DNA of 64,000 bases from Convolutriloba macropyga (taxonomy: Eukaryota): positions 36,084,001-36,148,000 of the forward strand of contig NC_134468.1 in assembly GCF_964194025.1 (NCBI RefSeq). The letters are read 5' to 3'. The translations under genes and the position numbers were made by a program. Positions 1-43,000 of this stretch are shown piece by piece. Numbering within the stretch: the first letter of the stretch is position 1; the number at the start of each line of letters is the position of its first letter. The notes beneath the pieces were generated by a model. It had not been told where the DNA came from, did no database searches, and saw only the letters and a program-made list of their open reading frames with translations.

Positions 1-874
1 GTTAAGGATATAGATAATGTTAATGATAATGTTAATGATAATGATAATGATAATGATAATGTTAATGATAATGATAATTATAAAGATAATGATAATGATG
101 ATAAAGATAATTTTATATATCAGGGAACCTGCTTGGCAGATCTATTTGATGAAAAACATGATGAAACATGGCAAGCCAAGCCTTATCAGAAGGGTAAACC
201 TATTAACAATAGTCCTACTAACAATATTTCTGTAAATATAAATGAAGATCTACAATCATGGCTAAATGATGATGATATAATTACTGAAGCCACATTCCCA
301 GATAATTTTAGATGTATAATATCTGGTCCTAGTGAATGTGGTAAAACATTCTTATTATAAAGCTAATTCTAGCTAGTATATATTTTGATAGCTATACATC
401 ATTGGACCTTTTAGTGATCAATACAATGGATTAGAAAGAATAAACCCAAAAGCAATTATAGAACTTTTTAAAGATATAAAAGATTCATCATCTCCTGATA
501 AACTACCCAAAGACTTAAAGAAACTAAAGATATTCGATGATAATAGAGCCAAAGGACCAGTTATTAATGAATACTTTTGTAGAGGTAGACATAATAATTG
601 TAATATGATATATCTTATTCAAAATCTATTCACAATAGATAGGCAGAGTGTTAGAGAGAATTCTAATCTATTTATTTTATTTGAACAAAGAGGTAAAGTC
701 CTCATATCTATATATCAAGATTTCTTTAATAACGTTGAACATAGTTATAAGGATTTTGCTAATAAATGTAATAAGGTATGGAAAGAGCCATATAATTATA
801 TTGTCATTGATAAAACTAAAAATAAAAATATTAATGGTAAACGAAGAATTAATTGGCATCGGAGAGTTTTGTAG
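1..874 (+). pseudogene. A32/FtsK-like genome packaging ATPase, disrupted
   Basis: Frame 1 is open from base 1 (DN-rich tract), with Walker A IISGPSECGKT, then TAA at 358-360 and frameshifts. Downstream are Walker B-like KIFDD, RGRHNNCNMIYLIQNLF and VREN (ORF 605-874). Confidence 0.88.
14..110 (+). repeat. (GATAAT)n-like microsatellite encoding an Asp/Asn tract
   Basis: gataatgttaatgataatgataat... in frame with the ATPase N-terminus. Confidence 0.85.
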
Positions 875-883
875 TTATTTATG

Positions 884-1216
884 TTTAATTATAATTAATA
901 ACTATACTAATCTGTGAATATTGTGTTAGGGATTGTACATGTTTTCTAAATATTTCTTTAGTATATTTATGGAGATTTGTACATAACTTACAATAGAATT
1001 GATTAAATCTATACTGAGAGATATGTTTATATACTTTACACTTTCTACATGTTAGATATTGATCGGGATTATTAAAATGTTCTAGTAAATGATCATGTTT
1101 ATCTCCATATGTTAAAATTCTATTACATACAAAACATTGATATGGTTTACCCTGACACCAATTAAAACTCTGACCCCAGGACTTATTTTACAATCATCAC
1201 ATTTAATACTAAACAT
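884..1216 (-). pseudogene. Small Cys/His-rich zinc-finger protein, one frameshift (not in ORF track)
   Basis: Manual translation: MFSIKCDDCK/(fs)KSWGQSFNWCQGKPYQCFVCNRILTYGDKHDHLLEHFNNPDQYLTCRKCKVYKHISQYRFNQFYCKLCTNLHKY... One C2H2 finger plus several CxxC pairs. Confidence 0.7.
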
Positions 1217-1382
1217 TTTTTAAGGAAAAAATATTAATTCAAACTTGTTATGATTATAATAAAACAAGGCTTTGCATAGCTGGTTAGACCAGATCAACGA
1301 AGTTGTTAACACAAATGGGTCTTCGACCTGCTAACTATGTTAGATCAACGAAGTTGTTAATACAAATGCAAAGTAAAACTTA

Positions 1383-2120
1383 TTACATCGCCATTAAATT
1401 TATAGGTCTTCCATGCTCATCTTTAATATGAAATTCTATAGATTCTATTCTATCTTTAGTTACATTTTGATACAAGATATTAGTTCGTATAATATTTATC
1501 AAGTAACCTGGTGGTTCTGTTAGAGTAAAAGTATATAGTATGTCAGTGTTATTCCCATTATCTTTAACACCAGATATCACATTACAATGAATGTTAATAG
1601 TACTCAAACCCATAATATCAACAATTTTCTGAGATGTATTTTTACCTTTTTTATAAACTATTTTTCTAAATCCTAGTAATGGGGCTATTGAGTTTTCTAT
1701 GTCAAAGTTAATTGCACCTTGTTTTACTTCCATTAAACTTTTCATTGTACTCTTATCAGATTCTATTATAACATTACCATTAGTTTCTTCTTTTATTAGT
1801 TCTGCTATTTCGAATAATTCATATGCTCCTGGTATAATAGCTGAAATACGGGTATCTGGCCATGTTGGGGAACCAGGGCCGTAGGCCCCTTCACCTTGGG
1901 TATCATATAAGAATTGATTGTTCCTTCTATTCACATTAAACACCGTATTATAAACAGATTAAACTAATTAAACCTAATTTTGACGAGTTAAGTATAGGTT
2001 TACTAAAATAAACTTTTCTGTTGGCTTTATCATTCGAAAGTTAAGTGTATGCTCTTCTTTAGTTTAAGTTAAAGCTTCATGTATATTTTGTATTTCCCTT
2101 AAGATTAAATTGTCTGTCAT
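1383..2120 (-). pseudogene. Minor capsid (penton-like) protein, disrupted at the 5' end
   Basis: ATG at 2120 (MTDNLILREIQ...), then a stop and frameshifts, then YNTVFNVNRRNNQF..IIPGAYEL..APLLGF..INIHCNVISG..NG..DILYTF..EPPGYLI..IKDEHGRPI. This pattern is typical of Polinton minor capsid proteins. Confidence 0.8.
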
Positions 2121-2136
2121 TTTTTATCTAATAAAA

Positions 2137-3297
2137 ATGGACTTTAATTTGGATACAACTTATGGTTATAATAATGATATACACAAAAGTAAGATTATAA
2201 AAAATAAAACAAATAATCTGGCAACAATGAATACAATCAATACTAACATTAATATCATTCTCAATAGAGAAGAGAATCATTTAAATTTGCTTGATTCATA
2301 TCTAGAGATAGAGTTTGTTTTATCAGATGATGCTGGTGGTGTATTTGCTAATGATGCTAATATCAGATTAGTTAATTATGGTATGATGGCATTGTTTAGT
2401 TCAGTTAAGCTTGAAACTAGTGGTGGTAGGACTATTGAAGATATAGATCATTGTCATCCTAATCTATTGATGTATAAGTTATTAACGAGTACTATTGATG
2501 AATATGAGAGTGGTTTTTTAGAAATCAAGGCAATAGAGATCGTCAACTTAAAGGTGATCATATTGCTGCACAACGAGGTCATATGTGTACGATGATTAAG
2601 ATGAGTGATCTATTTGGTTTCGTAAATGATTTAGAAAAGATTATATATGGTTTAGGATTTAAACTAATATTAAAAAGAAATAATAATGATAGAGCTCTAT
2701 ATAGAGTTAATGCTAATCCTGGTGCAGTTGCTAATGATTGTAATATAGATATTCAAGATATATCATTGTGTGTACCTAGTATTGATCCTAATAATGACAA
2801 TAGAATTATTGTGCAAAATCGTTTAAGTAAAAAGAATAATGTAGACTTTAGTTATTATGAAGGAAAGACATTTTATAAGAAAGCACCCAATGCTACTAAC
2901 TTCTTGTTTGATCTAGGTATGGAAAGTGGGATGGAAAGACCACAATATATAATAGTTGGTTTTAAAAATAATAATGTTAATGAACAAACTCATGATGCAA
3001 GTACATTTGATATAATGAATGTTACTGAATGTTATTGTAAGATTGGTAGCGAGTTTTATCCTGAGGAGAGAATGAGTATTAATTATGGTACCAATAATTA
3101 AAATGTGGCCTTTAAAGAGATTTCTAGCTTTGATGAAGATTATAATGGGCTACCACATAATATAAAACCATATAAAAATCATTAAACATTCAAAAGTAAT
3201 TGCAGTTGCCAATGTTATATGTCATGCATTAGTATTAATTAGAAAGGTTATTAGCGTGAATAGTGATAGTAATAAGATGGTTGATGTTATATCATAA
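2137..3297 (+). pseudogene. Major capsid protein (double jelly-roll, hexon-like), frameshifted
   Basis: ORFs 2110-2595 and 2583-3101 join by a frameshift: LLDSYLEIEF, NYGMMALFSSVKL, LFGF..DLEKIIYG..FKLILKR, ERPQYIIVGF, STFD, IGSEFYP. C-terminus VICHALVL...KMVDVIS* ends at 3297; probable internal deletion near 3200. Confidence 0.85.
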
Positions 3298-3333
3298 TTA
3301 TAATTATCTGCAAAGCAGTTCCTGATAACTATT

Positions 3334-3522
3334 TCATACTTGTCTTAACAAAACCCTAGCATAAATAATGTCTAGTTTCTTTTTATTCTCTAGAGATAAG
3401 CCTCCAGCTTCAAGCTTAATCTTAGCCTTGGGCCTAACCTTCGAGCTTCGCTCGCGGGCGGAACCCGTAGGCTTAGGTTTAGGCTTAATAACAAAAAAAG
3501 GATTATACTTTTTGACTTCCAT
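3334..3522 (-). CDS. Small basic viral protein (62 aa, KPKPKP), function unknown
   Basis: Intact ORF with an A-rich start context, divergent from the 3541 gene; Lys/Arg rich. Confidence 0.5.
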   Translation of the reverse strand: MEVKKYNPFFVIKPKPKPTGSARERSSKVRPKAKIKLEAGGLSLENKKKLDIIYARVLLRQV

Positions 3523-3540
3523 TATTTTTTATATGTAGAA

Positions 3541-3947
3541 ATGAGTCTTTTACAGAAATTTAAAACGAATTTATATTGTGTTGGAGGTAGACATTATAGT
3601 GATACTAATAACATAATAGGTTTTATTACTTCAAAAGTTTCTAAAATGTTAAAGGATAAATGTGTTAACTGTAAGAGAAAAAAGTCAATGACTGTTAGTG
3701 ATGCAACAATAGAAGCAGAGGGATTGAAAGTGTTGGTAGGGCTACAGTTAACTTTGGAGTGAAGGTTGCCAATAATCCAGTAAGAGCATTAGAAATAGCA
3801 AGTAAAATAGGAAGTGCAGCTGCATCTAGAATCCCTAGAGCTGCTTTATCAACCACACCTGATTTAATTAAATTTGCAACTACTGGTGAAGGCATAAAGG
3901 TAGTACAAAAAGGAAGAGGGTTATACTTAGGTACTAAGCAGAGCTAA
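3541..3947 (+). pseudogene. Putative virion core/precursor protein, one frameshift
   Basis: ORFs 3541-3762 and 3759-3947 join near EAEGLK. N-terminal YC..GRH / CVNCKRKKS Cys cluster, an Ala-rich amphipathic segment and C-terminal QKGRGLYL resemble the GxGL motifs of Polinton core proteins. Confidence 0.6.
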
Positions 3948-4062
3948 TTATTTGATTATGATTATGATTATTTTATGTTTATATTTATGTTTATGATTAT
4001 GATTAAGTTATATTTATGATTATGATTATGATTATGATTATTTTTATATTTTGTTTATGATT
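3945..4062. repeat. (ATTATG)n-like microsatellite between convergent genes
   Basis: gattatgattatgattat... tracts. Confidence 0.85.
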
Positions 4063-4719
4063 ATCGATCTGCGAAGCAGGTTCCCTGATCGGTGTAACCG
4101 TTTCGCTGATAAATATTAATACTAATATTATTATTACTAAACATACTATTATTACTAAACACCAATAACTTTGGCTTAAAAAAATACTCAGTTTGTTTTT
4201 CTTGTTCTTCTTATATTCTTCATATACATTGACTAATTCATTATACTCATCATTATCTATTTTATTATCATTCATTGATTTACTATATAGTCTATTAAAA
4301 TTATCGCTAAACTGTTTACTTAAAATATACATTTGTGAATATTGTATATTTTTATTTCTAACTTTAATATTAATTGTTTTTGATAATGAACCACAAACAG
4401 TTGCTGGAGCAAAAACTGTTGGTATAGAATAGGGTAATCCTATACCTGTTAATGCAACTGATGTTGATGTTGCAGTTGTTGCTATAGATGATAGTACTAT
4501 TTCTGTTATCTCTGCTACGTTAATATAATTCTTATATCTAATTAACTTCTTATTATAGTTATTAGTTTCAGTTTCATAATAATTTCTAATATCTTTTATA
4601 ATGTTAATATTGTTGTTAAAATTATTATTAGCTTGGATTTTTCCATTTATGTATTGTTCACTAACGGTTGACAAGTTGGGATATAGTAATCTCTCACTCG
4701 GTGCTGTTGGGTTAGTCAT
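4003..4719 (-). CDS. Polinton/adintovirus membrane-associated coiled-coil protein (resembles the family annotated as gasderminX)
   Basis: N-terminal PTAP and LYPNL, a central hydrophobic hairpin (IVLSSIATTATSTSVALTGIGLPYSIPTVFAPATVCGSLS) and SKSMNDNKIDNDEYNELV. The last ~55 aa run into low-complexity DNA and may be read-through. Confidence 0.65.
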   Translation of the reverse strand: MTNPTAPSERLLYPNLSTVSEQYINGKIQANNNFNNNINIIKDIRNYYETETNNYNKKLIRYKNYINVAEITEIVLSSIATTATSTSVALTGIGLPYSIPTVFAPATVCGSLSKTINIKVRNKNIQYSQMYILSKQFSDNFNRLYSKSMNDNKIDNDEYNELVNVYEEYKKNKKNKLSIFLSQSYWCLVIIVCLVIIILVLIFISETVTPIREPASQIDNHKQNIKIIIIIIIIINIT

Positions 4720-4732
4720 AGTTTCAGTTATT

Positions 4733-5458
4733 TTATTTCGTAAAAATTCTTTCTATTTCTTTCGTCATATCTTCTTGTTTAAAACCATAATGCATCTCAA
4801 GCCTTGCTTGCTCTTTATTATCAACTGACGTACTTCGTAAAATTTTAACAATTATATATTGTACTATTGTCCTTTTATTCTTTAAAAGGGCTTCGTCTAG
4901 AAAAAAATTTGTGTTTTTATTAACTTCTTTAAATTCTTTTAGCCCAGTAGTAAACATTTCATCTCGTTGTATTTTAGTGATATTCTGATTAATTTTATTA
5001 TTATCAATCTCTAGTTTCAGTTGATTATATTTAGAGATAGTATCAGCAGCAAATTTATTACAAAACTTAACAGTGTTTGTGACTTCATTTGCTGATTTAA
5101 TAAATTCTGTAATTAGTTCTTCATTAACTTGTGTTTCATTTAGTTGTAATGTTTTAGTTGTAACTTTATCAAAGTCACCCTTTCTTAGTTCAGTTATGTT
5201 TCTACTTAAAATGTCTATTTTATTAGAAGAGGATAATAAGTTACTGTCACAATACTCTTTATTAACAACATCTTTTTCATCTATCGGAGGATGTACATTT
5301 GTAATTTTATAGGTATCCTTCATATCAATATTATCATTATCTTCTAGGAATAACCCAACAGCCTTACTTGGTGTTAAGTTGTTTGTTGATGTTGATATTG
5401 ATCCGAGAAGCGGGTTCCCCGATTGATGTTTAGCTTGATTGAATCTATTTCTTGTCAT
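4733..5458 (-). CDS. Fibre/adhesin-like protein with neck motif and coiled coil
   Basis: IDMKDTYKITNVHPPIDEKDVVNKEYCD matches the DM..kItNl..P....DavnK.YvD motif of phage tail fibres and trimeric adhesin necks; a heptad-rich region follows. Confidence 0.6.
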   Translation of the reverse strand: MTRNRFNQAKHQSGNPLLGSISTSTNNLTPSKAVGLFLEDNDNIDMKDTYKITNVHPPIDEKDVVNKEYCDSNLLSSSNKIDILSRNITELRKGDFDKVTTKTLQLNETQVNEELITEFIKSANEVTNTVKFCNKFAADTISKYNQLKLEIDNNKINQNITKIQRDEMFTTGLKEFKEVNKNTNFFLDEALLKNKRTIVQYIIVKILRSTSVDNKEQARLEMHYGFKQEDMTKEIERIFTK

Positions 5459-5479
5459 CTTTGTATTTGTTTACAGAAA

Positions 5480-6464
5480 TTACAGAATTATACCTAATGA
5501 TTCCAAAACCTTATTATTAGATTCAAAGTCAAACTCGGAATTTAATAGTTCATGTTCATAAAATTTACCTTCTAATATCTCTCCATTAATATCTTCTATT
5601 TTATATGTTGGTGGTTGTGTTTTGAGAACTTAAACAGTTATTAACTTTAAACAGTTCTCTATTCCGATTAGAAATGTAACCTTTAGAGAAGATATTACGT
5701 TTATCTGCATTTCTAACTTAATCACCAACTTTAATATTGGGTTTAGTATTCCTATAAATGAATGAGTATTTAACGTTATCAGGATTATTAGAAGCATCAG
5801 CAGGTGTCATATTAATTGTTGAATGAATGTTATTGTTATATGTTACAACAGCATCATTTAATACATTTACCCAATTACCATCACCATTGATGAACATAGG
5901 TTTATTTATTATATGTAACAATTTTCTTTTGAATATCTCTATAAACACAGCCTTTAAATCACTATAAGTAGAATATAGTTTTGTTTCATATTCTTTAAGT
6001 AAAGATTTAAATGTTTTATTGTAAAACTCACTACCTCTGTCTACCCATAACTTTTCTGGTTTTCTACTTTCACTTAATACTATTTTAAAACCATTAGTTA
6101 TAGATAATTCAGATTTATTCTCCAATGGAATAGCCCATGCATATTTTGTGAATCGATCTATAACAGTTAATATAAACTTATAATTTTTATTGTATTTACT
6201 TAGAGATGACTTATCAACTAAATCAGCTCACCATGTTTCATCTTTATATAATGGTATTATTCTTTCTCTTCTAAACTATGTTATTTGAGGACTGAATATT
6301 TCTATAGCTAGTAATTTTTGTTTAGTTTTAATCGTGTCTTGTTTACTTGTGGATATAGTCATCTGCGAAGGGGCTCCGCCCTTGGTTCCCCAAGCGGGTT
6401 CCCTGATGGACGTAGTCATAGCTTTGCTCATCTGTGAAACAGCTTCCTTGATAACTTTGTCCAT
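5480..6464 (-). pseudogene. Retroviral-type (rve) DDE integrase, disrupted
   Basis: ETW*ADLVDKS..YKFILTVIDRFTKYAWAIPL..KPEKLWVDRGSEFYNK..KAVFIEIF..YNNNIHSTINMTP..KVGD*VR..FSKGY..PPTYKIED..GKFYEHEL. In-frame stops present; no chromodomain seen. Confidence 0.92.
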
Positions 6465-6469
6465 TTTTG

Positions 6470-6846
6470 TTTATATAACATAGTTTAAAAAAAATTATCT
6501 AGTTGCTCTTGATTAATAATATACATAGATAATAGTTGCTTAGATATATCTAGCATTTCATCATATAATCCATCATGACCAGCTTTTGTTTCTAGTATTA
6601 ATAATTCTAGTCTTTCTATTAAATTATTTGGGTCCAAATAGTGGCGCAACTTGGGGAACCAAGGGCAGAACCCCTTCGTTGGTTGGCTTTGCTAAGACCA
6701 CTAGCTTCTATTTGTTTATCAGTCTCATAATCGGTGTAACCGCTTCGCAGATCAATCTCATAATCAGTTTCTTCTTCTTTTTCTACTATCCCTTGTTCAT
6801 TGGAAGTGAGAAAGCTCAATCTAGTTCCACTAGCATGGCGGTCCAA
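6470..6846 (-). pseudogene. C-terminal part of a conserved uncharacterised Polinton protein
   Basis: After a frameshift it reads YLDPNNLIERLELLILETKAGHDGLYDEMLDISKQLL, matching the DPNxLxxRLxLL...AG(N/H)...E...I motif recurrent in Polinton ORFs. Confidence 0.65.
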
Positions 6847-9800
6847 ATGTTACAAAATAAAAAACAAACCAAGGGAAGAAATCAAACCAGTAGATAAGGA
6901 AAGACAAATTAGAAAAATCTTTAGAATCAATCAGAAAGTTTAATTGTGTAAATGAAGAAATAAAGGAGTCGTATGATAAACAGGATGCAAAATTAAAACA
7001 AAGAGAAGATATGCGTGAGTCATTGCGAAAGGCTGAAGCAAAATATTTTCCAGATTTAGATCAATCTAAAGACTTAGATCAATCTAATGACTTAGATCAA
7101 TCTAAAGATTCAGATTTAGACTCATATTCATCCGATGATTTTGTCTAGGTCCAAAAGCCTAAAACAAATAAGATTAGATGTGAAGAATGTGATGAAGAGA
7201 TAACTCGAAAGAATTATAACAGACACATTCAATCGCTTAAACCTAAAAAAAGAATGAGCGATTATATAATAGAAATAAAATCATTGAGAGTGCTAATGAG
7301 GATGGAATAAAAGTTACTAATGACGATGTAGAACAAAAGTTGGATGAGCAGTATCCTGAACTAGATGGAATAAAGTTTTGTGATAGTTGTGATATGTATC
7401 TTGATAGTAATACTGCTTATGATAATCATGTGACAACATTAAAACATAGGAATAATGTAAGATTGGTTAATGGGGAAATAGTAAAGAACGGGAGTAAGTT
7501 TGATTTTGCGATATGCAAGACAAGTCTGAGTCAATATAGCGTGTATCAACAATTAAAAACAAAGATGCATATGGATAATGCTAATCTACGAAGCGGTTTC
7601 ACCGATGGTAAAGATCTGTGAAGCAGTTTAACTGATAAGGATATAGATAAGGATATAACTAAGGATAATATGGCCGATGGATATTGCAATAAATGTAATA
7701 ATAGATATAACAATAAAAATGAACACAATGAATCAGATGCACATAAGGAAAATGTTAATCAGAAAAAACTTGTTGATGGGAAGTGGCGAGATAAAGTTAA
7801 TGAGTTAGGATTAGATCATAACATGAAGCATAATCAAATAATAATAACTAGTAGTAATTATGAAGATCCTCAATTCTTAAATATACTGGAGTCATTGCAT
7901 AGCATACATCCCCATATTAAGTTTAACACCTTCGATGTAGTTAAGTATACAAAACCTACAGATGATAAGTTAGAAGAAAACGAATTCACTTTTAGGTTAA
8001 TGACAAGGCAATATAATGGTGCACATAACTTGGGTTTATTGAATGGGGAACTTGAGTCGAGAATGCAGGAGCAAGAGATGAATCAATTTGGATGGAGCAT
8101 GCAACGATTTGTTAAAAGGACAATGTATATTCACAGGTTTTATCCAAGTGGTGGATGTGATACTGAGTTACCATTCACGTCTATATATGAATACTTAATA
8201 TACATAATACTGATAATAAGTGTCTGCTATGGTGTCTAATTCCTTATCTACATCCTGCATCACGTGATCCAAATAGAGTTAATAGAGTAAATAAAATAAA
8301 CCTGAATATATTAATGAGTTAAAATTACCAAATTTGGGTTATACCCCCATATGATTATTATTACTTAAAGAAAATACAAGAACTAAATAAAGATAAAATA
8401 TTATTTAATGTGTTTAATCTAAATAAAAATAAAACTTTTAATCCTGTATTAATTAATCATAATGATCCTAAAAGATTAAATATATTATACTGGGATAATC
8501 ATTACTTCCTATGTAGAGATGTATCATTCTTATTAAGAAAATCATCTAAACATATATGTTATCCATGTCTGGAATATTGTGTATCATTTAGAACAGAAGA
8601 TGGATCAAATAAACATTTGGATTTATGTAATAGACAAAAACATATAGGTAGAAGAATTTTCCAAAGATGATTACCTAAATTTTGATAAGTTCCATTATAA
8701 GAATAGAGTACCATTTGCTATGTATTATGATTTTGAATGTAGAATAAAAGATGGTAAACACTTACCTATTGCTTGTGGTTTATATATAAAAAATGACTAT
8801 CCTGATATATTAAAAGATAATTATGAAAGTTATTCCGGTGAAGATATAGTTGATTGGTTTGTGGAAAGAGTAGATTATTATAATAAATTATTTAAAAATA
8901 ATTTTAGTATAAATATTCCACTTAATGAAGATACTATTACTCCACTCACTAATATGTGTTACTATTTTAATGGGAACTTCGGTGAACACGTCGTTAGAGA
9001 TCATGATCATCTAAATGGTAAATTCAGAGGTTATGCTCACAACAAATGTGACCTCCAAGCTAAGAATACAATCGTACCAATATATGCATTTAATTCTTCT
9101 AATTAGGTTAATCATCTATTTATAACTAAACTAGCAAAGAAGATTAGACTTAAAGTATTAACTAAAACTGATGAGAATTATATTAGTATTGATATGGGTT
9201 ATGCTAAAGCATTAGATATGTTTAGGTTCTTCCATCAACTTAGCTTAGATGCTATAAGTAAAACATTGAGTAATGAAGAATGTATAACATTAAAAAAAAT
9301 GTGGCTTAGAAAGACGTAAAGGTATATTCCCATATGAATGGTTTGATAGTATAGATAAACTAAATGAAACAACATTACCACCTAAGGAAGCATTCTGTTC
9401 TAAGTTGAAACAAATTGGTTTTACAGATAAAGAATATAAGCAAGCAATTGATTGTTGGAAAGATACTAAATGTGAGACAATAAAAGATTATATGAGGTTA
9501 TATCTTAAAACAGATGTATTGTTATCACTTGATGTATTTCAGAAATTTAGAGCAATTTGTTTAGAATATTATGAAATAGATCCATGTTACACATATTCTA
9601 CTCCTGGGTTAAACTGGTTGTGTGGAATGAAATATACTAATGTTAGACTTAAGTATTATAAAGAGAATACAGTTAATATTTATGATACAATACAACACGG
9701 TATAAGAAGTGGGCTAGCTTCAGTATTAGGTGATTGTCATGTAAAATATAAAAATAAAGAAATAGAACCTGAGTATACAGGGAAAGAGAATTATCTAAAA

Positions 9801-10990
9801 TATTTAGACTTCAACTCATTATATGCTTCTGCTATGGTTCAAGCTTTACCTAATGGTGAGATCGATGTATGTGAAGAATTGGGCTACACTAGATCTAGCG
9901 CTAACACAGGTTATGTCTACACCATCGATATTAGGTATTGTGATGAGTTGAAACAGAAAACAAATAAGTATCCATTCTTCCCTGAGAAAACAAAAGCATG
10001 TGTAGATCAGTTTACAGATTATCAAAACGTAAATAAAAAGAAAGGATATAAACCTAATGAGAAGTTAATGCTAAAATTAACAGATAAGGTAGATTATGTA
10101 ATAGATGGAGAGATGTTAGATTGGTATTTAGATCATGGTTTGAAATTAGAAGATATTACAATTAAGCAAAAGTTAGAATATAGTAAGAGTGAATGGTTAA
10201 AACCTTATATTGAGTTTAATAATAAGAAAAGAAAAGAAGCTAAAGCTAATGGTGATAAATTTGGGGATGTATTCATTAAACTAATGAGTAATGCCTTCTA
10301 TGGAAAAACAATAGAGAATGTATATAATAGACAAGATGTAGAGTTGGTTAATGATGTAGATAGGTATATAAAATTAGTAGAAAATATAAGTTTTATATAT
10401 GCTGTGGAATTCGATAATGAATTAGTAGCTGTACATAAAGCTCGAGGTAACGTAAAATTAGATATGTTTATTTATATAGGTTTTGTTATATTAGAAAAAG
10501 CTAAGCTATATACGTACAAAGCCATATATGATTACTTTGAAAAAAAATTAGATTGTAGTTATCATTGCACAGATACAGATAGTATATTCATAAACATAAA
10601 TGTTCCTTTAGATAGTAATATAGAAACTGAAATGAATAAGATAAAAGATTTTTTACATAATGATGAGTTAGGTAAGATGAAGGATGAATTACCTAATGAT
10701 ACTATTATAGAAGCATGTTTCCTTAAAACTAAAGCATATTGTTACAATACTGTTAAAAGAGAAGAAGAGAAAAAGTTAAAAGGTTTAACTAAAGCCACTA
10801 TTAACAAACAGATTACATTGAAAATTAAACTAATGCTATATATGAAGGTAAAACTAAGTATGTAACTAATTATACTATTGATAGTAATAAACATCATTTA
10901 GAAACTAAAGAACAATATAAAATAGCTATTGATCCATTTGATGATAAAGGTATTAGAGCTAGTAATGGTGAATTTAGGTTTTACAACTAA
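6847..10990 (+). pseudogene. Protein-primed family B DNA polymerase with N-terminal zinc fingers and endonuclease VII-like insert, disrupted
   Basis: ExoI YYDFEC, VRDHDHLNGKFRGYAHNKC, KGIFPYEWFDS, ExoIII LYLKTDV, motif A YLDFNSLYASAM, motif B KLMSNAFYGKT, motif C TDTDS, LGKMKDE, KLKG. Spread over ORFs 7340-10865 with several stops and frameshifts. Confidence 0.93.
7053..7112 (+). repeat. 18-bp coding tandem repeat (DLDQSK/N x3)
   Basis: gatttagatcaatctaaa / gacttagatcaatctaat / gacttagatcaatctaaa. Confidence 0.85.
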
Positions 10991-11307
10991 TTTTTATAAA
11001 ATAATAGCAAAAGTTAAAATTTATAAAAGAGTTAAGCTGGTTTTTTATTCAAGTTATCCACGAAGTGGTTACAACAATTTTCGAAAGTTGGTTTTACGTG
11101 CTTTTTACACGGTCTCACTAGTTTTATACTAGTATCTGGGATACGTTCACTGGAGTCAGTGAGGATAGAACCCGAACTATCCGTCTGATAGTGGACAATT
11201 ACCAGCTTAACTCTGTACTAGTGGATTGCACTAAGTGAGACAAGAAATGATAGATTTAAAATATAAAAGAAGTGAATATAGAGTAGTGGATATATAAAGG
11301 GAATTAG

Positions 11308-11373
11308 AGTAATGTGTATATGGGTACCGTCTCGCTGGCTCTATGCTGCGGAGGTACCCATATACACATTACT
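11308..11373. repeat. Perfect 21-bp inverted repeat with 24-nt loop at the candidate Polinton end
   Basis: agtaatgtgtatatgggtacc (11308-11328) and ggtacccatatacacattact (11353-11373). Confidence 0.95.
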
Positions 11374-14054
11374 TGCATGGCCGATTACGCTAATTTCCGG
11401 CTAACAATACGCCATTGGGCAAAAATTGCACGTCAATCCTAAATTAATCCCGAATCAAGACTGATTTATTCATGAACAATAGACATGAAAAGTAGACAGA
11501 CAAATGATTTTTATCCTAAATCAGAACCTGAGCTACGAATAATAATATAGCAAAAATTTCTCAGAATTTCGATATTAAGTATTTTTTCTGCGATTGTTTT
11601 AATCGCCAAGAATAAACAAAAAACAATTAGACTATACAAAAAAAACAACTGACGATGTGCTCGCCAATTTGCTAATAAATATTGAGAAAGTTGAATATCT
11701 GCAAACATTTACTGAACAAGATTAATCAGTATTTAAAAAATAAGTTGGAAACTAAATGTTTAGTAGAAATTTAAATTAAGGAGACGCTGGCTCATTATAA
11801 TGCAAAAACTCTGGTTTTTTACTGATTGTGCTATAAAAATTCCTATTATAACTCTATCAAGTGAGAATGGCAGACTCGGGGGTTGAATAAATAGAGAATA
11901 ATATAAAAAAAGGCTAGTATAAGTAATTTTCCAGCCCAACAACTGAAACTTGTTATTCTGGATAGCTAAACCTCGAGAGACATTAAAATATACAGTTGAG
12001 AGTTTGCGAGGAACTAAAACTTCTTGACAAAAGGAAAAATACAATTTTTTGACAATTACTTCCATTATGTTCTTTAGAACCAGTTTTTTCTGATAGAAAT
12101 TTTATCCCTATAAATCTTATCCCTATTATTCCAAATGAGCAGTTTCCTGAACCATTTAACTAAATATTGGACCTACAAAAGTACCTTTTGCAATCACAAT
12201 CAATCCTGTCACTGAAGTTGAAAAATACCATACAAATAGGAAAAACACAAACGCAGAGTCAAAAAACTTCCCACATTATATGTGGTTTTTGTTGTCAAAT
12301 CCCGTTTTTCTCCAGAAAACTAATTCAAATAACTCTAAATTGAGGTAATTTCGTGTCCAGATTGCAAGGCTTTGGTCCTAAAAATAAGTAAAAAAATCGT
12401 TTTGCATGAGAGGAACTGATCAAAAGAGCAAAAAACCAGTTACACATTTATTTTCATTCCCGAAATAAATTGGCCGGAACGAAAGCGTTGATCGAGCAAT
12501 GGTAACGAGCTATAGTGGTGAGCTGCAAAATATAATCAATCTGGGGTTTTAATCAAAGAACTTTCACAATAAGGAGCACCGACTTCAAACATTCAAAAAG
12601 TACGAAATTGCTACGACTACAACCTTGTCATAAATGATTTCTATTATAGCAAAACTTTCATTGATGTAACTTTCAACGTTGCTACTTCTCCATGAGAGCA
12701 AACAAAAAATTGAAAACACACAAAAAAGTAAAAAAAAATTGATTGGAGCAGGTCCTTGTAGAGTCCGTTCTTAAGCAAAATTAAACATAAGGAGCTGAAA
12801 ATAAGGAGTTGAAATCCCAAAAAGGCCGTTTTTGAAAACACACAAAGAGGAAAGAAATACATTTAAGAAGGTCCCTGTAAGGTCCCTATTTAAATCTACA
12901 ATAAAAATAGAAGTATGATGGTAGCTTTTTCTTGCAGGCTATGCATAAATAGAGGAACTTTTTTCAAGAGATATAAAAAAGCTATAGTCGAAATTGAAAT
13001 CCCGAATAGGCCGTTTTTGTAAACAAACAAAAAGCAAAGAAATCCTTTGAAGAAGGTCCCTGTAGGTCCCTTTTTTAAGCAGAATTAAACAAAGGAGCTA
13101 ATCAAAATTTCATTGGCTTTTAAAATCCTTCAGTATATGACATACTACGAAAATAATGTGGGCATCATACTCACTACGAAAAGCACTTTGACCCAGGGAA
13201 AAGCACTTTGACCCACATATTTTTAAAGGACGGTGGACTGTTTGAGAAACATTCCATAAAATTGCAAAGCTTGAAGTTATGAATTACTTATGGTAAATTT
13301 CTGCATATCATTGCCAACGTTAGCCTATCACACGCTTTTGTATGACTTTCACTAATCTAGATGACTTTCAATAATAGTAGCAAAAATAAGACATTATTAT
13401 TGTCATGCCAATATTAGCAAAATATTTTTGTTTAAAATTAATCAAGATTTTTTCTTTTCTGATCAACATTATGTGCTATTTGTTTGGATTCAGAAAAACG
13501 AGCTCCGCCAAAAAGCTTAGGTAACAAAAATGAGTTACTTGGTAACATTAAAATTTTATTATACTTACGCTGTAAATAACTGAGAGAATTTATTCATTGA
13601 TGCGCTTCGTTCATATAAAGCAAATCTCAGAAATTATCAATATTATAAAAGAGATTTAAACCACCATTCAGTTTTCAGTATGTTGCTACCTTTTCATCAA
13701 AATGATATTTTATAGTTTCTGCTGAGTAGCTAAAAATCGACTCTTGCATTAAGTTCATGAAAATTTGATACACTGTCCTGATCAGAAGTAAAATTTTTGG
13801 CTGTTTTATCCAAAAACCAAGCATTCAAAAAAAACAACCAAAAGCAAAACCGTTCAAACTACTTTGATTGAGTCAGCAGGCTTTTTGCCTCAAACCGTGT
13901 TAATTTAGATGTTTGAAGTCAATTCCTCTCTTGACCGAAGTATATTGCTAAGAAAATTTTTTCTACATCACTAGAAAGGTCTCTCACAGATGACGTTTGC
14001 CGACTGAATTTTAAGGCGAGAATATGTCAGTTAGTATAGTTTTTAAATTTCCAG

Positions 14055-14492
14055 ATATCAACCAAGAGTATCTATACCCAGTGATCAACCAGTCGGTGCC
14101 TCTAAAGCTACTTTATTACACTGAACACGAGCAGTGGGCAATATCAGACAAAGTGTACATGCGAGAGATAAATGACTGGCAACATCCATCTAGCGCCAAC
14201 ATGAACATGATCAGAGTTGATGTTCCATTAAGACGCCGTTCCCTATTCTTCGGAGTTTTCCTAATCTACCCAAACCTCCTCCTCTACCTTTTGTCAGTAT
14301 TTACGTATTTGCTTCCCCCTGAGTCTGGAGAGAAAGTAAGCTTTGCAGTTACTCTGTTTCTGGCACAAGTGGTCAACTTTGGAACAATGTTGACAATATT
14401 TCCGGCAACTTCTCGTCACCTTCCGATTGTCGTATATTTCGCCTGTGCTGTCTCTGGTCAAATGATGGTCATGTGTTTTTTCGCCATATGTG
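14055..14492 (+). CDS. Cys-loop ligand-gated ion channel (nAChR/5-HT3-like) copy 1, exon with loop C and M1-M3
   Basis: tttccag acceptor and G|gtgagt donor; EHEQW..LRRRSLFF..LIYP..YLLPPESGEKVSFAVTLFLA..IFPATS..LPIV. Confidence 0.9.
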
Positions 14493-15112
14493 GTGAGTGT
14501 GGACCGAAAAACAGGAGTTCAAATTTGATTATTTGGAACTCAACTTAACGGTGGGAGAGAAAAAACCTTTGCTTACCTACTTTATTTCGTTGGTCATTAT
14601 TCACCAACAGATTTATACTTAAAAAAACTGTTCGGTAAAATTTTAGGATCAATTTTAGGATCAATTTTTGTTCTTCATTTTTCTTGCTTTCGTTTTGACA
14701 AACTAACTATAGCAAAACAATATACTTAGAATTTAATTGCAGGCGACAGCCAACTGAAGGAAAGACATTATATGCTCAATCAATTAGGAAATACTACCTA
14801 ATAGTTGTTAACTTTCGATCAAATTGTTGTTGTGGAAAACTTTCACAAGATACTTCAACATGTTTTTGAAAATATCTAAATTCAACACTTAGAACTAGAT
14901 TGAAAGCTTATGTCGTAAAAACCCTAAGTAATCGCAGTGCAACAAAATTCTTCCTTGCTGTTTTTTCTCCTTTTGTCTATTATCTTCCGTCAAAAAAAAC
15001 ATCACAAAGAACCTTCTTTTAATTTAAGGCACATGATTTTATACAGCCCATTACCTGTATTCGTAGCCAAATACATTGATTCACGTTTGCGATATTCGCA
15101 TTGACATAAAAT

Positions 15113-15657
15113 CCTTTTAGTCGACAGTGATCATTTTTAAAGTGAAAAAATCAATTTACCTTTCCATTTTTTTGCCTACTTTTCTGCTTCTGTAAAAATT
15201 GTTTAGAATAAAAAACAATCAAGAAGCTGCAATTTGGTGGAACAAGAATACATTTTAATTAATTTCAGTGTTAGATAAAAGCTCAATCACAAATTCCGAT
15301 GGGAATTTGTAGTCTAGAAAACATTAAGAAACCGAATAAAGCCGCGTTTTTGTTTTTTTTGAGCTACATCTGTTGATACAATTGCAAATCAGACGCTAAA
15401 TTTTGTCAACAGTTGTAGCTCAAAAAAAAAAACGCTGGCATTGTTCGGTTTCTTAAGGTTTTCTAGACTTCAAATTTTATCGGAACTAACGTAATTAACG
15501 CCGAATTTAATTAAATTAACTTCTTGTTCCACCAAATTCCAATTTCTTGCTGGTTTTATACTCTAAACATTTTCGACAGAAGCAGAAAAATAGATATAAA
15601 AAGCGGAAATGTGAATAAGTTTTTTCACTTTGAAAATAATCAATGTCGACTAAAAGG
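15113..15657. mobile_element. Fold-back/MITE-like ~545-bp imperfect palindrome
   Basis: ccttttagtcgaca...aagtgaaaaa mirrored by tttttcactt...tgtcgactaaaagg; inner arms (gtctagaaaac/gttttctagac, gagctaca/tgtagctc) continue towards the centre near 15390. Confidence 0.8.
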
Positions 15658-16539
15658 CTTCCCTATGTTTTAAAAGGCATTATGTGAGATACTGTTCCAG
15701 TTTGTGTCATTTTGTTTTTATTTTCTAGCCTCTCATCACCGGATTCGTTTGCTTTATTCGCATTGTTCAAAAGTGGCATCGGTTCAGAGAAGTTTAAATA
15801 AATACAGAAAAAACGCAATTGTGACAATTTTCTTTGTTTTTATTCTCCTGGTTGGGGTTCAATTTTTTTTCATAGTTCTAGGTTTTTTCATGGCATATTT
15901 TTGGGCTTGAAATTAAATCAGAACAGAGAACGAATTCTTGAGATGCCGTAAACTTGTGAAATGATTTTTTAAGAGAGCAGATAGCAACTCGTTGGTTGCT
16001 CGTTTTTTTGCTATATTTTTTTTGCTACGAAATTTGCCATTTGCTGTCCAAGACGGTCAGACCGAGAGTCAAGTACCGGGCATACGGAAAAGATTTTGAC
16101 TACGCTATGAGCAGAATCAATCCAGATTATAACCAGACTAGACCGCTCTAAACCTGGAGCCATAGACTGACCGATTCAACACATTCCATACCCTAAACGA
16201 GACCAAAGAATCATAGGTCACACTTGTCTAGGCCGAATAGAATTTTGCGAAAGTGAGCCCAGCTAAACAGACCCATAATCTATGCCCTGAGTGAGATCAA
16301 AAAGATTTTTCATAAACCTGGGCCACAACGAATAGAAATAGGCCAGGCTTTAGCCCGGTCTGAAAAGACAAGATAGCAGACACTGGGCCAGACCTAACAC
16401 ACTGGACTTTGATCACCCTGAGCCATAGAAAATTCTCATTTTTAAGAACCATGCCGTTTCTGAAATCAAATTTGGCTCTTTTTTGCTTATGCCCCCTCCC
16501 CAATACGTTATGCACTCTCCAGTTACAGATAACGTTCCA

Positions 16540-19500: not shown

Positions 19501-19850
19501 CTGCTTCAATTGCTCCGCTTTGCTCTGCATTCAATTCTGGTTGCGGACCTGTGCTTATATATGCAAGGCAAGGAATGTTCAAATATGCTTCGTTCTTGAA
19601 CAAAGTTCACTGGGCAAGGCTTAAACTTTTATCGACGCACAGGTTATTTTTGTTAGTTGTTGCTATTGACACTGTCTTCGTCAAATTGGAGATTGGTTTG
19701 CATTTCACCGTCCAGATCCTCGAACCAAAAGCACCGGGTTCTCTCTTTTCGAAATCAATGTTTACATTGCTCAGTTGTTTTCAGTGGTTTCAAATCTGTA
19801 CTGATATTACATTTTGCAGATAATTTTTGTGAACTGTTTTATTCACTATA
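16540..19850 (-). mobile_element. Degenerate BEL/Pao-like LTR retrotransposon internal region, antisense in the channel intron
   Basis: Gag-like GPHVI...LIKISVIVYNFVNVF..SDM..STLYMTLDKLPRVLRNRW, a CVRC knuckle remnant and RT-like traces (FLVFDRGAA, RHTCHIF). Heavily decayed; LTRs not identified. Confidence 0.55.
17432..19032. repeat. Tandem duplication, 2 x ~800 bp
   Basis: cagctatgatgaacgtaacaacgg starts at 17432 and 18231; paired ORFs 17525/18324 and 17893/18727. Confidence 0.95.
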
Positions 19851-28414: not shown

Positions 28415-28852
28415 ATGTGAACAAAAACTACCTTCAGCCAGATGAAAACAATTCAGCCCCACTCAGACTTCAATATTACACAGAACACGAGCAGTGGCTG
28501 CTTCCGACGACTGCCTACATCCACAAAGTATTAGACTGGCACCACCCTTTAACTGCCAGTATGAACATGATAGCAATTGAGATCACATTACAACGTCGTT
28601 CATTATTCTTCGGATTGTTTCTCATCTACCCAAACGTTCTTCTTTATTTCCTCTCAGCCTTCGCATACCTTATCCCGCCAGAACCTGGCGAGAAAGTAAG
28701 CTTTGCAATGACTCTGCTACTGGCAGAGGTAGTCAATTTTGGGGCGATGCTGACCATTTTCCCATCCAGCTCTCTGAATGTTCCTGTTATTGTCTACTTC
28801 GCGTGCGCGGTGTCAGGTCAGATGATGCTCATGTGCATTTTGGCCATATTCG
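28415..28852 (+). CDS. Cys-loop channel copy 2, exon with loop C and M1-M3
   Basis: tttccag acceptor and G|gtaagt donor; same 438-nt length and phase as copy 1; YLIPPEPGEKVSFAMTLLLA. Confidence 0.9.
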
Positions 28853-29086
28853 GTAAGTCTTTTTGACTTAAGCCGATGAAAACAGAATGTCCATACGATA
28901 AACGCAATATGTTAGGAGGCCGCATGCTTTTAATAGAAAACTTCATTGAATAAGAAAATCCATTCAAATACTGGTCATTCATTCTGTATATTTACCTTGG
29001 TTCTCTTAATAAGTTAGAACTTAAATTCAACCCTCAATAACTTCATCAGAGTCCCACAACCTATACATCACAGTAGTTCTTTTCAG

Positions 29087-37632: not shown

Positions 37633-37662
37633 AATAAAAAAGAGAAAAATTAATTAAAAAAA

Positions 37663-42915: not shown

Positions 42916-43000
42916 CGGTAATAAGCGTTCCTTCAATGAAAATCTGAAAAAGTTATGTTGATATCAACAATAACAAAGCAGCAGAGCAATTTGCAAAATA

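What the first reader, a model, noticed from the sequence alone, without database searches (positions are those of the whole stretch)
119..11078. Family of 21-nt double-minihairpin micro-insertions scattered through the Polinton, in frame in viral genes
Seen: GC-rich 23-nt units AT-[19 nt]-AT in otherwise very AT-rich DNA, in both orientations. Copies: 119-141 atcaggGAAcctgcTTGgcagat; 4067-4089 atctgcGAAgcaggTTCcctgat; 4088-4110 atcggtGTAaccgtTTCgctgat (shares its AT with the previous copy); 5401-5423 atccgaGAAgcgggTTCcccgat; 6430-6452 atctgtGAAacagcTTCcttgat; 6730-6752 atcggtGTAaccgcTTCgcagat; 7584-7606 atctacGAAgcggtTTCaccgat; 7614-7636 atctgtGAAgcagtTTAactgat; 11056-11078 atccacGAAgtggtTACaacaat; a shortened copy at 3306-3326. 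Each unit is two overlapping 4-bp hairpins sharing the middle arm, with one GNA triloop on each strand. Stems covary (ctgc/gcag, ctgt/acag, ccac/gtgg; cagg/cctg, cggg/cccg, cggt/accg) while loops and length are kept. Counting one AT as a duplication, the net insert is 21 nt = 7 codons, giving peptides QGTCLAD, IREPASQ, SGNPLLG, IKEAVSQ, LRSGYTD and LRSGFTD in different frames. They lie in N-terminal or linker regions and intergenic gaps; I saw none in the capsid body, integrase core or PolB catalytic core, nor in flanking host DNA. Established: d(GCGAAGC)-type GNA minihairpins are exceptionally stable in ssDNA, protein-primed replication displaces ssDNA, and in-frame palindromic inserts are known from Rickettsia palindromic elements and organellar GC clusters. 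Inference: a structure-defined selfish micro-element or ssDNA cis-signal that spread while the virus was still under selection. I know of no description of this in Polintons.
Basis: partly seen in the sequence, partly recalled or inferred. Interest (0 to 1): 0.92.

Follow-up and report, generated by a model that had tools for sequence, protein, structure and literature searches.

The report
Tiny hairpin inserts riddling a Polinton
A 15-kb virus-like transposon (Polinton) in an acoel worm genome carries many 21-base GC-rich double-hairpin inserts that are present or precisely absent between copies and add exactly seven codons to viral genes, which marks them as a very small mobile DNA parasite of a kind not reported in such elements.

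Summary
All ten quoted copies are at the stated coordinates. The descriptor AT-N4-GNA-N5-TNC-N4-AT with at least 6 of 8 stem pairs hits 7 times in window 1-11100, never in the other 52.9 kb, and never in shuffles.

The carrier is a true Polinton: 6-bp target duplication, about 380-bp terminal inverted repeats, protein-primed PolB, double-jelly-roll capsid. It is a decayed copy and ends at 11373, not 11078. The host is almost certainly the acoel Convolutriloba macropyga.

Six related copies from the same genome carry about 10 units each, 61 in total, at about 39 or more distinct sites. At least 11 sites have natural empty alleles that differ by exactly 21 nt; 8 of those 11 keep a single AT. One protein has hundreds of copies, and 54 of 102 carry the 7-residue insert.

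Both hairpins covary, using all four Watson-Crick pairs. One identical 23-mer sits at 9 or more non-homologous sites. Units lie in both orientations, in all reading phases and in intergenic DNA.

Best reading: a structure-defined selfish micro-insertion that targets AT, often GAT, in Polinton DNA. The enzyme and the single-stranded DNA step are inferred. The closest analogues are mitochondrial GC clusters and double-hairpin elements.

The parts
1..11373 (.). Part of a Polinton/Maverick lying in the window. The whole element is 14,966 bp and starts about 3.6 kb left of the window. Termini are 5'-AG...CT-3'. The copy is decayed.
   Evidence: TIR arms of 384 nt at 98% identity. Ends and TSD read directly. 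PolB, DJR capsid and ATPase found by Pfam here or in relatives.
11374..11379 (.). 6-bp target-site duplication of the Polinton. Its twin flanks the left end, outside the window.
10998..11373 (.). Right terminal inverted repeat. It contains unit 11056-11078. The last 21 nt (11353-11373) have a perfect inverted copy at 11308-11328.
119..141 (-). 23-nt unit (21-nt insert plus AT), 8/8 pairs. It lies in the Asp/Asn-rich N-terminal extension of the packaging ATPase and is read in frame.
   Evidence: It forms an inverted 27-nt match with 4063-4089.
3306..3326 (.). Shortened (21-nt) degenerate unit, intergenic, downstream of the capsid gene.
4067..4089 (+). Unit with 8/8 pairs, private to this copy. 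It shares its right AT with the next unit.
   Evidence: Absent from six aligned relatives (L001 twice, L002, L003, L005, L006). The empty site has a single AT preceded by G.
4088..4110 (.). Unit with 6/8 pairs, in tandem with the previous one. It is the older of the two.
   Evidence: Shared with L005 (8/8 pairs there); absent from L001 (two copies), L002, L003 and L006.
5401..5423 (.). Unit with 7/8 pairs near the N-terminus of the intact 241-residue ORF (4733-5458, minus strand). It encodes a 7-residue insert.
   Evidence: Exact 21-nt absence in L001. Insert present in 54 of 102 full-length protein copies.
6361..6407 (+). Composite: a 23-nt unit split by a nested 24-nt insert of the second family. 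Lies in the N-terminal part of the integrase gene.
   Evidence: inverted 29-nt match to 6650-6678.
6430..6452 (.). Unit with 6/8 pairs in the N-terminal part of the integrase gene, where relatives have a simple trinucleotide repeat.
6730..6752 (-). Unit with 7/8 pairs in the N-terminal part of the integrase gene.
7584..7606 (+). Unit with 6/8 pairs at the end of the zinc-finger ORF upstream of PolB, read in frame.
7614..7636 (.). Unit with 7/8 pairs and one loop position off the descriptor, 8 nt after the previous unit.
11056..11078 (+). Unit with 7/8 pairs inside the right TIR. An identical mirror copy lies in the left TIR (L004 18734).
1..874 (+). Packaging ATPase (A32-like) with a long low-complexity N-terminal extension. 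Broken: 1 frameshift.
1383..2120 (-). Putative minor capsid gene. Broken: 4 in-frame stops relative to the L003 copy. Carries a 24-nt second-family insert.
2110..3300 (+). Major capsid protein (double jelly roll). Broken: 1 frameshift and 1 stop.
4003..4719 (-). 238-residue ORF of unknown function. Its C-terminal tail reads through units 4067 and 4088.
4733..5458 (-). 241-residue ORF of unknown function, intact; 729 homologues in the protein collection.
5483..6798 (-). Integrase (rve-type by weak Pfam hits in relatives). Broken: about 3 frameshifts and about 3 stops.
6850..7640 (+). C2H2/U1-type zinc-finger protein gene upstream of PolB.
7670..10990 (+). Protein-primed family-B DNA polymerase with an Endonuclease VII-like HNH motif. 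Broken: at least 3 frameshifts and 1-2 stops.
1867..1890 (+). 24-nt GC-rich insert of a second hairpin family, absent from L002 and L003.
6650..6678 (+). Second-family insert; inverted copy of the one nested in 6361-6407.

Best explanation
The units are copies of a selfish, structure-defined micro-insertion. Each has a 19-nt GC-rich core flanked by AT on both sides, for a net gain of 21 nt.

Shown:
- They are insertions. They enter at AT dinucleotides, with a G before the AT three times more often than expected, so the target is often GAT. The end of a resident unit offers such a site, which explains tandem pairs that share an AT.
- They are copied from templates. The same 23-mer recurs at unrelated sites.
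- They add exactly seven codons and are read through in ORFs that stay open.
- What is conserved between subfamilies is not the sequence but three mutually complementary arms (arm 1 = arm 3 = complement of arm 2) around fixed GNA/TNC loops. Either strand can therefore form one of two alternative 4-bp minihairpins.
- After insertion the stems decay.

Inferred:
- The folded form (single-stranded DNA or an extruded cruciform) is what an enzyme recognises for copying or insertion.
- Insertion happens in replicating Polinton DNA, whose protein-primed strand displacement exposes single strands. This would explain why the host flanks are free of units.
- The multiple-of-three length is an adaptation that lets the parasite survive in a genome that is nearly all coding.

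Not identified: the enzyme. The Endonuclease VII-like HNH domain fused to the Polinton PolB is a candidate by position only.
For: Empty alleles:
- The 42 nt of units 4067 and 4088 are absent from L001 (two copies) and L002, and one AT is left. Unit 5401 is absent as exactly 21 nt in L001.
- In a 7-copy alignment, 21 nt is the only recurrent gap length of 15 nt or more (5 events).
- Flank-by-flank search found empty sites for 8 further units. In total at least 11 sites have empty alleles, 8 of them with AT.
- At the protein level, copy lengths differ by 7 residues, and the insert is present in 54 of 102 copies.

Copying: the 23-mer at window 4067-4089 recurs unchanged at 9 or more non-homologous sites in L002, L003, L004 and L006.

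Structure:
- Both helices have 4/4 pairs with changes on both sides. Cells paired are 95% and 92%, against 77% and 69% in shuffles and 15-54% when the partner is slid.
- Columns 4, 12 and 20 use all four Watson-Crick pairs.
- Pairing holds without selecting on it.

Distribution: 0 units in about 64 kb outside the elements, against 29 descriptor matches in 46 kb inside.

Tolerance in genes: 49 of 61 units lie in open stretches of 80 or more codons. All six orientation/phase classes are used, and none has an in-frame stop.

Target: the base before AT is G in 19 of 43 oriented units, against 14% background.

Nesting and tandems.
Against: - No transposase-like or HUH protein was found in the Polinton, and nothing ties the HNH domain to the units. 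Polintons with that domain in other assemblies have none (L009).
- Generic DNA folding energies are ordinary.
- All evidence comes from one genome and about 110 kb of it. Only about 64 kb of non-Polinton DNA was seen.
- Duplication of AT cannot be told apart from insertion between A and T.
- Three of 11 empty sites are AA or GT. This fits 80% copy identity but is not proof.
- Presence or absence at the ORF241 site needs 15 steps on a neighbour-joining tree. That is fewer than the 34 of random labels, but not 1. Recombination, precise loss or repeated gain must be added.
Confidence: 0.72

Rival explanations
1. A mechanistic variant. The units are minimal rolling-circle (Helitron-like, HUH-type) passengers. 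A 21-nt segment that starts TC and ends GA is pasted as a single strand between the A and the T of an AT, with no target duplication, and its hairpin serves as the end signal.
For: The target is AT. The insert begins TC in 56 of 61 units and ends C-N-G-A. Head-to-tail tandems use the AT recreated at a unit's end, as described for Helitrons (PMC2267711). There is a GC-rich hairpin just before the 3' end. Helitron hallmarks are taken from PMC2267711 and PMC4778049.
Against: The 3' tetranucleotide fits CTRR in only about half of the units, because its second base covaries with the stems. The unit is symmetric under reverse complement, so TC...GA follows from ATC...GAT. No Rep/helicase was seen in the loci. 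Known non-autonomous Helitrons are far longer.
Confidence: 0.15
2. The units are cis-acting signals of the Polinton itself, such as pause, priming, packaging or transcription signals on displaced single strands. They would be kept by selection for the virus and moved between genomes by recombination.
For: They are restricted to Polinton DNA. Structure is conserved across subfamilies. One unit sits in each TIR. Orientation is weakly biased: 27 of 39 sites on one strand, p = 0.02.
Against: Positions are not conserved between copies that are about 80% identical; most sites are private or shared by few copies. Units fall in both orientations and inside coding sequence at arbitrary places. Shared (older) units have lost pairs without compensation, and private ones are perfect. 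Four other Polinton-like elements lack them altogether.
Confidence: 0.08
3. The units are by-products of break repair or template switching, for example snap-back synthesis or short patches copied from another genome during replication. They would not be a self-propagating element.
For: The hairpin-prone sequence and 2-3 nt of microhomology between unit ends (ATC/GAT) and preferred targets (GAT) are what a microhomology-guided switch would give. Several GC-rich insert families coexist and nest in each other.
Against: Length is fixed at 21 nt with exact boundaries at 11 or more sites. Identical 23-mers occur at unrelated sites. The GC-rich content is unlike the AT-rich flanks. Covariation keeps both stems across subfamilies.
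Confidence: 0.04
4. The units are a conserved peptide module or an assembly artefact.
For: The same peptides recur.
Against: The same DNA is read in six phase/orientation classes, giving unrelated peptides, and also lies in intergenic DNA and in the TIRs. Units are found on many contigs, with divergence and with presence/absence alleles.
Confidence: 0.01

Closest known systems
GC clusters of yeast mitochondrial DNA (e.g. GC42; PMC4478555)
   Same: Short GC-rich hairpin-forming inserts scattered in a very AT-rich genome. They are flanked by a 2-3 nt direct repeat (AG or ACT there, AT here), vary in presence between genomes, have constrained stems, merge and nest, and their enzyme is unknown.
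   Different: They are organellar, 30-60 nt long and mostly intergenic. The units here are 21 nt, sit in a nuclear-integrated virus-like element of an animal, lie mostly inside ORFs, and have two overlapping alternative hairpins with fixed triloops.
Double-hairpin elements of Allomyces/chytrid mitochondrial DNA (Paquin, Laforest and Lang 2000, cited in PMC4478555; details from my own knowledge) and repetitive hairpin elements of sponge mitochondria (PMC2800124)
   Same: Mobile GC-rich elements defined by a two-hairpin fold rather than by sequence; also found inside genes.
   Different: They are longer (tens of nt), their hairpins lie side by side and do not share an arm, and they are organellar.
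Rickettsia palindromic elements
   Same: Palindromic selfish repeats inserted in frame into protein-coding genes and translated.
   Different: They are 100-150 nt, bacterial and defined by sequence family; no 2-nt target duplication of this kind is described for them.
Bacterial REP sequences mobilised by RAYT transposases, and IS200/IS605 (my own knowledge)
   Same: Very short palindromes recognised as folded single-stranded DNA and tied to replication. They are the nearest precedent for how a 20-nt hairpin could be moved.
   Different: They are extragenic and bacterial, and a dedicated HUH enzyme gene is known. None was found here.
Helitrons (PMC2267711, PMC4778049)
   Same: AT target, TC start, a hairpin before the 3' end, and insertion next to a resident copy at the recreated AT.
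   Different: Size differs by orders of magnitude. The 3' CTRR motif is met in only about half of the units. No Rep/helicase was seen.
d(GCGAAGC)-type DNA minihairpins (PMC13037366)
   Same: Most units contain this heptamer or a close variant as hairpin 1. The loops are GNA on one strand or the other.
   Different: That is a biophysical motif, not a genetic element.

Membership tests
Polinton/Maverick (the carrier element) | Terminal inverted repeats and a 6-bp target-site duplication | tested here: met
   384-nt arms at 98% identity. The same 6-bp sequence flanks both ends, and the termini are AG...CT.
Polinton/Maverick (the carrier element) | Protein-primed family-B DNA polymerase | tested here: met
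   PF03175, E = 1.4e-12. 8,572 relatives, with full-length ones of 1,100-1,300 residues.
Polinton/Maverick (the carrier element) | Double-jelly-roll major capsid protein and A32-like packaging ATPase | tested here: met
   PF21738, E = 9.7e-14. The Pox_A32 hits on the homologous genes of relatives are weak or faint only.
Polinton/Maverick (the carrier element) | Retroviral-type (rve) integrase | tested here: inconclusive
   Only weak precomputed rve hits on the homologous gene in L001. The window's largest piece gives no Pfam hit. The gene is broken in all loci seen.
Polinton/Maverick (the carrier element) | Adenoviral-type cysteine protease | not tested
   No Pfam hit among the ORFs scanned. 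Not searched for specifically.
MITE (miniature inverted-repeat transposable element) | Terminal inverted repeats shared with an autonomous DNA transposon | tested here: not met
   Only 3 nt (ATC/GAT) are inverted at the ends. No parent element was seen in the loci.
MITE (miniature inverted-repeat transposable element) | Target-site duplication of fixed length | tested here: met
   A single AT at 8 of 11 empty sites, and AT on both sides of filled sites. This cannot be told apart from insertion between A and T.
MITE (miniature inverted-repeat transposable element) | Size of roughly 50-800 bp | tested here: not met
   21 nt net.
Helitron | Insertion at AT without duplication; 5' TC | tested here: inconclusive
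   Compatible: AT target, and T then C at columns 2-3 in 56 of 61 units. Equally explained by an AT duplication.
Helitron | 3' CTRR terminus preceded by a hairpin | tested here: not met
   Columns 19-22 read C-T-G-A in at most 32 of 61 units. Column 20 varies with its stem partners.
Helitron | Rep/helicase-encoding autonomous partner in the genome | not testable with these tools
   The host assembly cannot be scanned as a whole. None was found in the loci fetched.
REP/RAYT system | Extragenic palindromes with a cognate HUH (RAYT) gene | tested here: not met
   49 of 61 units lie inside long open reading stretches. No HUH protein was found.
Mitochondrial GC clusters / double-hairpin elements | GC-rich hairpin inserts in an AT-rich genome, with presence/absence variation and short flanking direct repeats | tested here: met
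   features of the family from PMC4478555.
Mitochondrial GC clusters / double-hairpin elements | Residence in an organellar genome | tested here: not met
   The carrier is a Polinton integrated with a TSD next to animal nuclear genes.

The most novel reading that the evidence does not exclude
These would be the smallest transposable elements known, with a 19-nt core. They would be hyperparasites of a eukaryotic virus-like element whose whole 'genome' is a bistable double minihairpin. They would be recognised as folded single-stranded DNA during protein-primed replication and pasted at (G)AT, possibly by a Polinton-encoded structure-specific nuclease such as the Endonuclease VII-like domain of PolB. 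Their length would have been tuned to seven codons so that they can live inside genes.
Probability: 0.3. Interest if true: 0.92.

Novelty: new variant of a known kind. Interest (0 to 1): 0.8.

Why it matters
Short GC-rich hairpin parasites are known from mitochondria and a few bacteria, and how they move has been unresolved for decades. This finding offers a very clean case for that question.

- The element is only 21 nt long.
- It has sharp boundaries and natural empty sites.
- Several subfamilies covary in structure.
- There are hundreds of host copies (Polintons) in one genome that can be compared.

It shows that virus-like elements of animals can carry their own molecular parasites. It also shows that such parasites can reshape viral proteins in seven-residue steps. 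The inserts are dense, dated, presence/absence markers for reconstructing how a Polinton family diversified. The restriction to Polinton DNA points to a step of Polinton replication as the place where insertion happens. No search I ran turned up a description of this in Polintons.

Tried and rejected
**Searches that found nothing or only chance matches**
- tRNA and Rfam scans of the window: nothing.
- Exact-pattern scans of IMG/VR and JGI metagenomes for the commonest unit types: no hits, or single hits in 49% and 58% GC phage contigs (L007, L012), which I take as chance.
- Polinton-like loci from other assemblies, with PolB 37-48% identical (L008, L009, L010, L013), and a 75%-identical PolB fragment from the same genome (L011): no units, or one degenerate look-alike in L011.
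- Literature searches for Polinton plus hairpin or in-frame inserts, and for acoel Polintons: nothing relevant.

**Analyses that were uninformative**
- Nearest-neighbour DNA folding: energies are unremarkable, so I do not use it as evidence.
- AlphaFold2 model of the 241-residue ORF: mean pLDDT 46. This is too poor to place the insert beyond 'low-confidence N-terminal stretch'.
- Pfam scans of 30 ORFs for a transposase or HUH enzyme: none found.
- A first attempt at the parsimony test failed on a wrong filter and was redone.

**Readings rejected**
- Peptide module, assembly artefact, introns (no splice signals, and the units are read through in ORFs), and footprints of a larger transposon (identical full-length copies at many sites).

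- The scripts printed every long alignment gap between this copy and its relatives with window coordinates. Some of those are not micro-inserts and may be gene-breaking length differences. I do not repeat or use them here.
- Alignment tools printed consensus lines of their own. I used none.

Full report
**1. The observation**

Each starts and ends with AT. Nearly all start ATC and end GAT. Each holds two overlapping 4-bp stems that share the middle arm, with loops GNA and TNC, and 6 to 8 of the 8 pairs are Watson-Crick.

- The strict descriptor hits 7 times in window 1-11100 and never in 11101-64000. One hundred dinucleotide-preserving shuffles of either part give essentially none.
- Selecting on pairing could be circular, so I repeated the scan with the eight fixed bases only. 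In 46 kb of three TIR-delimited elements there were 29 matches; 26 had at least 6/8 pairs and 13 had 8/8. In 63.8 kb outside there were 2 matches, with 0 and 3 pairs.

**2. The carrier and the host**

- The AT-rich region (27-32% GC) encodes a protein-primed PolB and a double-jelly-roll capsid protein.
- By homology with related copies it also encodes an A32-like ATPase and an rve-type integrase.
- The window's contig was recovered. It shows 384-nt terminal inverted repeats at 98% identity, termini AG...CT, and a 6-bp target duplication.
- The element is 14,966 bp. It begins about 3.6 kb left of the window and ends at 11373, not at 11078. Unit 11056-11078 therefore lies in the right TIR, and an identical mirror copy lies in the left TIR.
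- This copy is decayed. Counting breaks only: ATPase 1 frameshift; minor capsid gene 4 stops; capsid 1 frameshift and 1 stop; integrase about 3 of each; PolB at least 3 frameshifts and 1-2 stops.
- The rest of the window is animal DNA, with ligand-gated channel and GET4 genes.
- GET4 is 100% identical to a protein on an 89,262,563-bp record and 71% identical to the Symsagittifera roscoffensis protein. Chromosome 1 of Convolutriloba macropyga is 89.26 Mb (PMC13650328). The host is therefore almost certainly that acoel.

**3. The units are insertions with natural empty alleles**

The intact 241-residue ORF that holds unit 5401 has 729 homologues. Their lengths step by 7 residues. The 7-residue peptide is present in 54 and absent in 48 of 102 full-length copies.

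I fetched six further loci from the same assembly. They are 80-84% identical to window 1-6650.

- Units 4067 and 4088 (42 nt) are missing from L001 (two copies) and L002, leaving one AT.
- Unit 5401 is missing from L001 as exactly 21 nt.
- In a seven-copy alignment, 21 nt is the only gap length of 15 nt or more that recurs (five events). It includes one private insertion in the window (4067), one in L003, and sites filled in relatives but empty in the window.
- Comparing left and right flanks separately found empty sites for eight more units.

In total at least 11 independent sites have empty alleles: 8 carry AT, 2 AA and 1 GT. About two thirds intact is what is expected for a dinucleotide at 80% copy identity.

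**4. They are copied, and structure defines them**

- Across the window and six loci there are 61 units, 36 of them distinct in sequence. The 43 units of unambiguous orientation occupy about 39 distinct sites.
- The 23-mer of window 4067-4089 recurs unchanged at 9 or more non-homologous sites.
- Between subfamilies the loops and the ends stay fixed while the arms change together.
  - Column 4 (T 35, C 14, G 6, A 6) pairs with column 12 (A 33, G 15, C 7, T 6).
  - Column 12 pairs in turn with column 20 (T 32, C 18, A 6, G 5).
  - Column 14 pairs with column 18.
- Counted by the pair tool, both helices have 4/4 pairs with changes on both sides. Paired cells are 95% and 92%, against 77% and 69% in shuffles and 15-54% with slid partners.
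- Arm 1 and arm 3 are thus direct copies of each other, and both are complementary to arm 2. The family is closed under reverse complementation.
- Generic DNA folding finds the C-GAA-G hairpin but with ordinary energy. The exceptional stability of such minihairpins is a literature fact (PMC13037366), not something I computed.

**5. Where they land**

- 49 of 61 units lie in open stretches of 80 or more codons, roughly the coding share of the element.
- All six orientation/phase classes occur and give unrelated peptides. None brings an in-frame stop.
- Hot spots are low-complexity N-terminal extensions: the ATPase (six units in one ORF of L002) and the integrase N-terminal region in the window.
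- In L003, units also lie within the spans matched by the PolB and Endonuclease VII models.
- The base before the AT is G in 19 of 43 oriented units, against 14% background; C after the AT is mildly enriched.
- Several units are in tandem and share an AT. Second-family inserts nest inside units. The end of a resident unit therefore offers a favoured target.
- Host flanks have none.

**6. Interpretation**

These facts fit a selfish micro-insertion that multiplies within this Polinton lineage.

- A cis-signal is unlikely. Positions are not conserved, copy number per element ranges from 1 to 13, and shared (older) units have lost pairs while private ones are perfect.
- Repair by-products are unlikely, given the fixed length and the identical copies at unrelated sites.
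- How the units move is not shown. The dependence on a fold and the confinement to Polinton DNA suggest recognition of folded single strands or cruciforms during strand-displacement replication.
- A Helitron-like paste between A and T fits the AT target, the TC start and the head-to-tail tandems (PMC2267711). It fails on the 3' motif and on the lack of a Rep/helicase.
- The Polinton's own candidates are the Endonuclease VII-like HNH motif in PolB and the integrase. The integrase makes 6-bp duplications, not 2-bp ones. Polintons with that HNH domain elsewhere have no units.
- On a neighbour-joining tree, presence at the ORF241 site needs 15 steps, against 34 for random labels. Recombination between copies, precise loss between the AT repeats, or repeated gain must also occur. 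This is unresolved.

**7. Comparison and novelty**

- The closest known things are mitochondrial GC clusters (42-nt GC42 flanked by AG; constrained stems; unknown enzyme; PMC4478555), double-hairpin and repetitive hairpin elements of fungal and sponge mitochondria (PMC2800124), and the in-frame palindromic elements of Rickettsia.
- The units here work like these. They are not members of any of them: they are 21 nt long, their two hairpins overlap, they sit mostly in coding sequence, and they live in a nuclear-integrated virus-like element of an animal.
- I found no description of this.
- I rate it a new variant of a known kind, of high interest.

**8. Limits**

- All data come from one genome and about 110 kb of it.
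- No enzyme is identified.
- Other Polinton-like elements sampled (L008, L009, L010, L013) lack the units, so the phenomenon may be confined to one lineage.

Noticed in passing
window 1867-1890, 6650-6678, nested in 6361-6407; L002 about 5928, L003 6289, L005 4679, L006 17883: A second family of GC-rich micro-inserts of 24 nt (8 codons). Each has a constant first hairpin followed by a 4-5 bp stem with a GNA or AAA triloop, and the stem covaries between copies. The copy at 1867-1890 is precisely absent from L002 and L003.
   Followed up: partly
window 3446-3471 and L002 10061, 15174 (nested in units): Further GC-rich inserts of 24-26 nt that are present in some copies and absent in others. Two of them are nested inside or abut 21-nt units. 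Their families were not defined.
   Followed up: no
window 11308-11328 and 11353-11373: The last 21 nt of the Polinton have a perfect inverted copy 24 nt further in, so each end of the element can fold back on itself.
   Followed up: no
window 1291-1317 and 1342-1368: A 27-nt direct repeat (96% identical, 51 nt apart) in an intergenic stretch. Each copy holds a CAAC-GAA-GTTG minihairpin preceded by GAT. It may be an AT-richer relative of the units.
   Followed up: no
window 8720-9106 and L003 5362-7056: The Polinton PolB carries an Endonuclease VII-like HNH domain (PF02945, E = 1.8e-09 in L003). The same domain is on the PolB of a distant Polinton without units (L009).
   Followed up: partly
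all loci, 39 distinct oriented sites: The C-GAA-G hairpin lies on the strand that encodes the 241-residue ORF at 27 of 39 sites (p = 0.02). There is no bias relative to the local coding strand (23 same, 26 opposite).
   Followed up: partly
ORF 4733-5458 and its 102 full-length homologues: Presence of the 7-residue insert is clustered on a tree but needs 15 changes. This hints at recombination between Polinton copies, or at precise loss between the flanking AT repeats.
   Followed up: partly
window 34170-37767: Host satellite: about 11 tandem copies of a 314-bp unit, mostly 95-99% identical.
   Followed up: no
window 46538-52704, with N runs at 46086-46397 and 49923-50305: A tandem duplication with a 3.8-kb period at 95-100% identity. 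Each copy is preceded by an assembly gap, which was left as it is.
   Followed up: no
window 14024-14548 and 28417-28866: Two paralogous exons of ligand-gated ion-channel genes, 71% identical at the DNA level and 14.4 kb apart. GET4 lies at 41887-42936 as a single exon.
   Followed up: no
L001 (ctg37881), 9100-20705: Three partial Polinton copies in tandem in one locus, carrying only one clear unit in 20 kb. This lineage is nearly free of the inserts.
   Followed up: no
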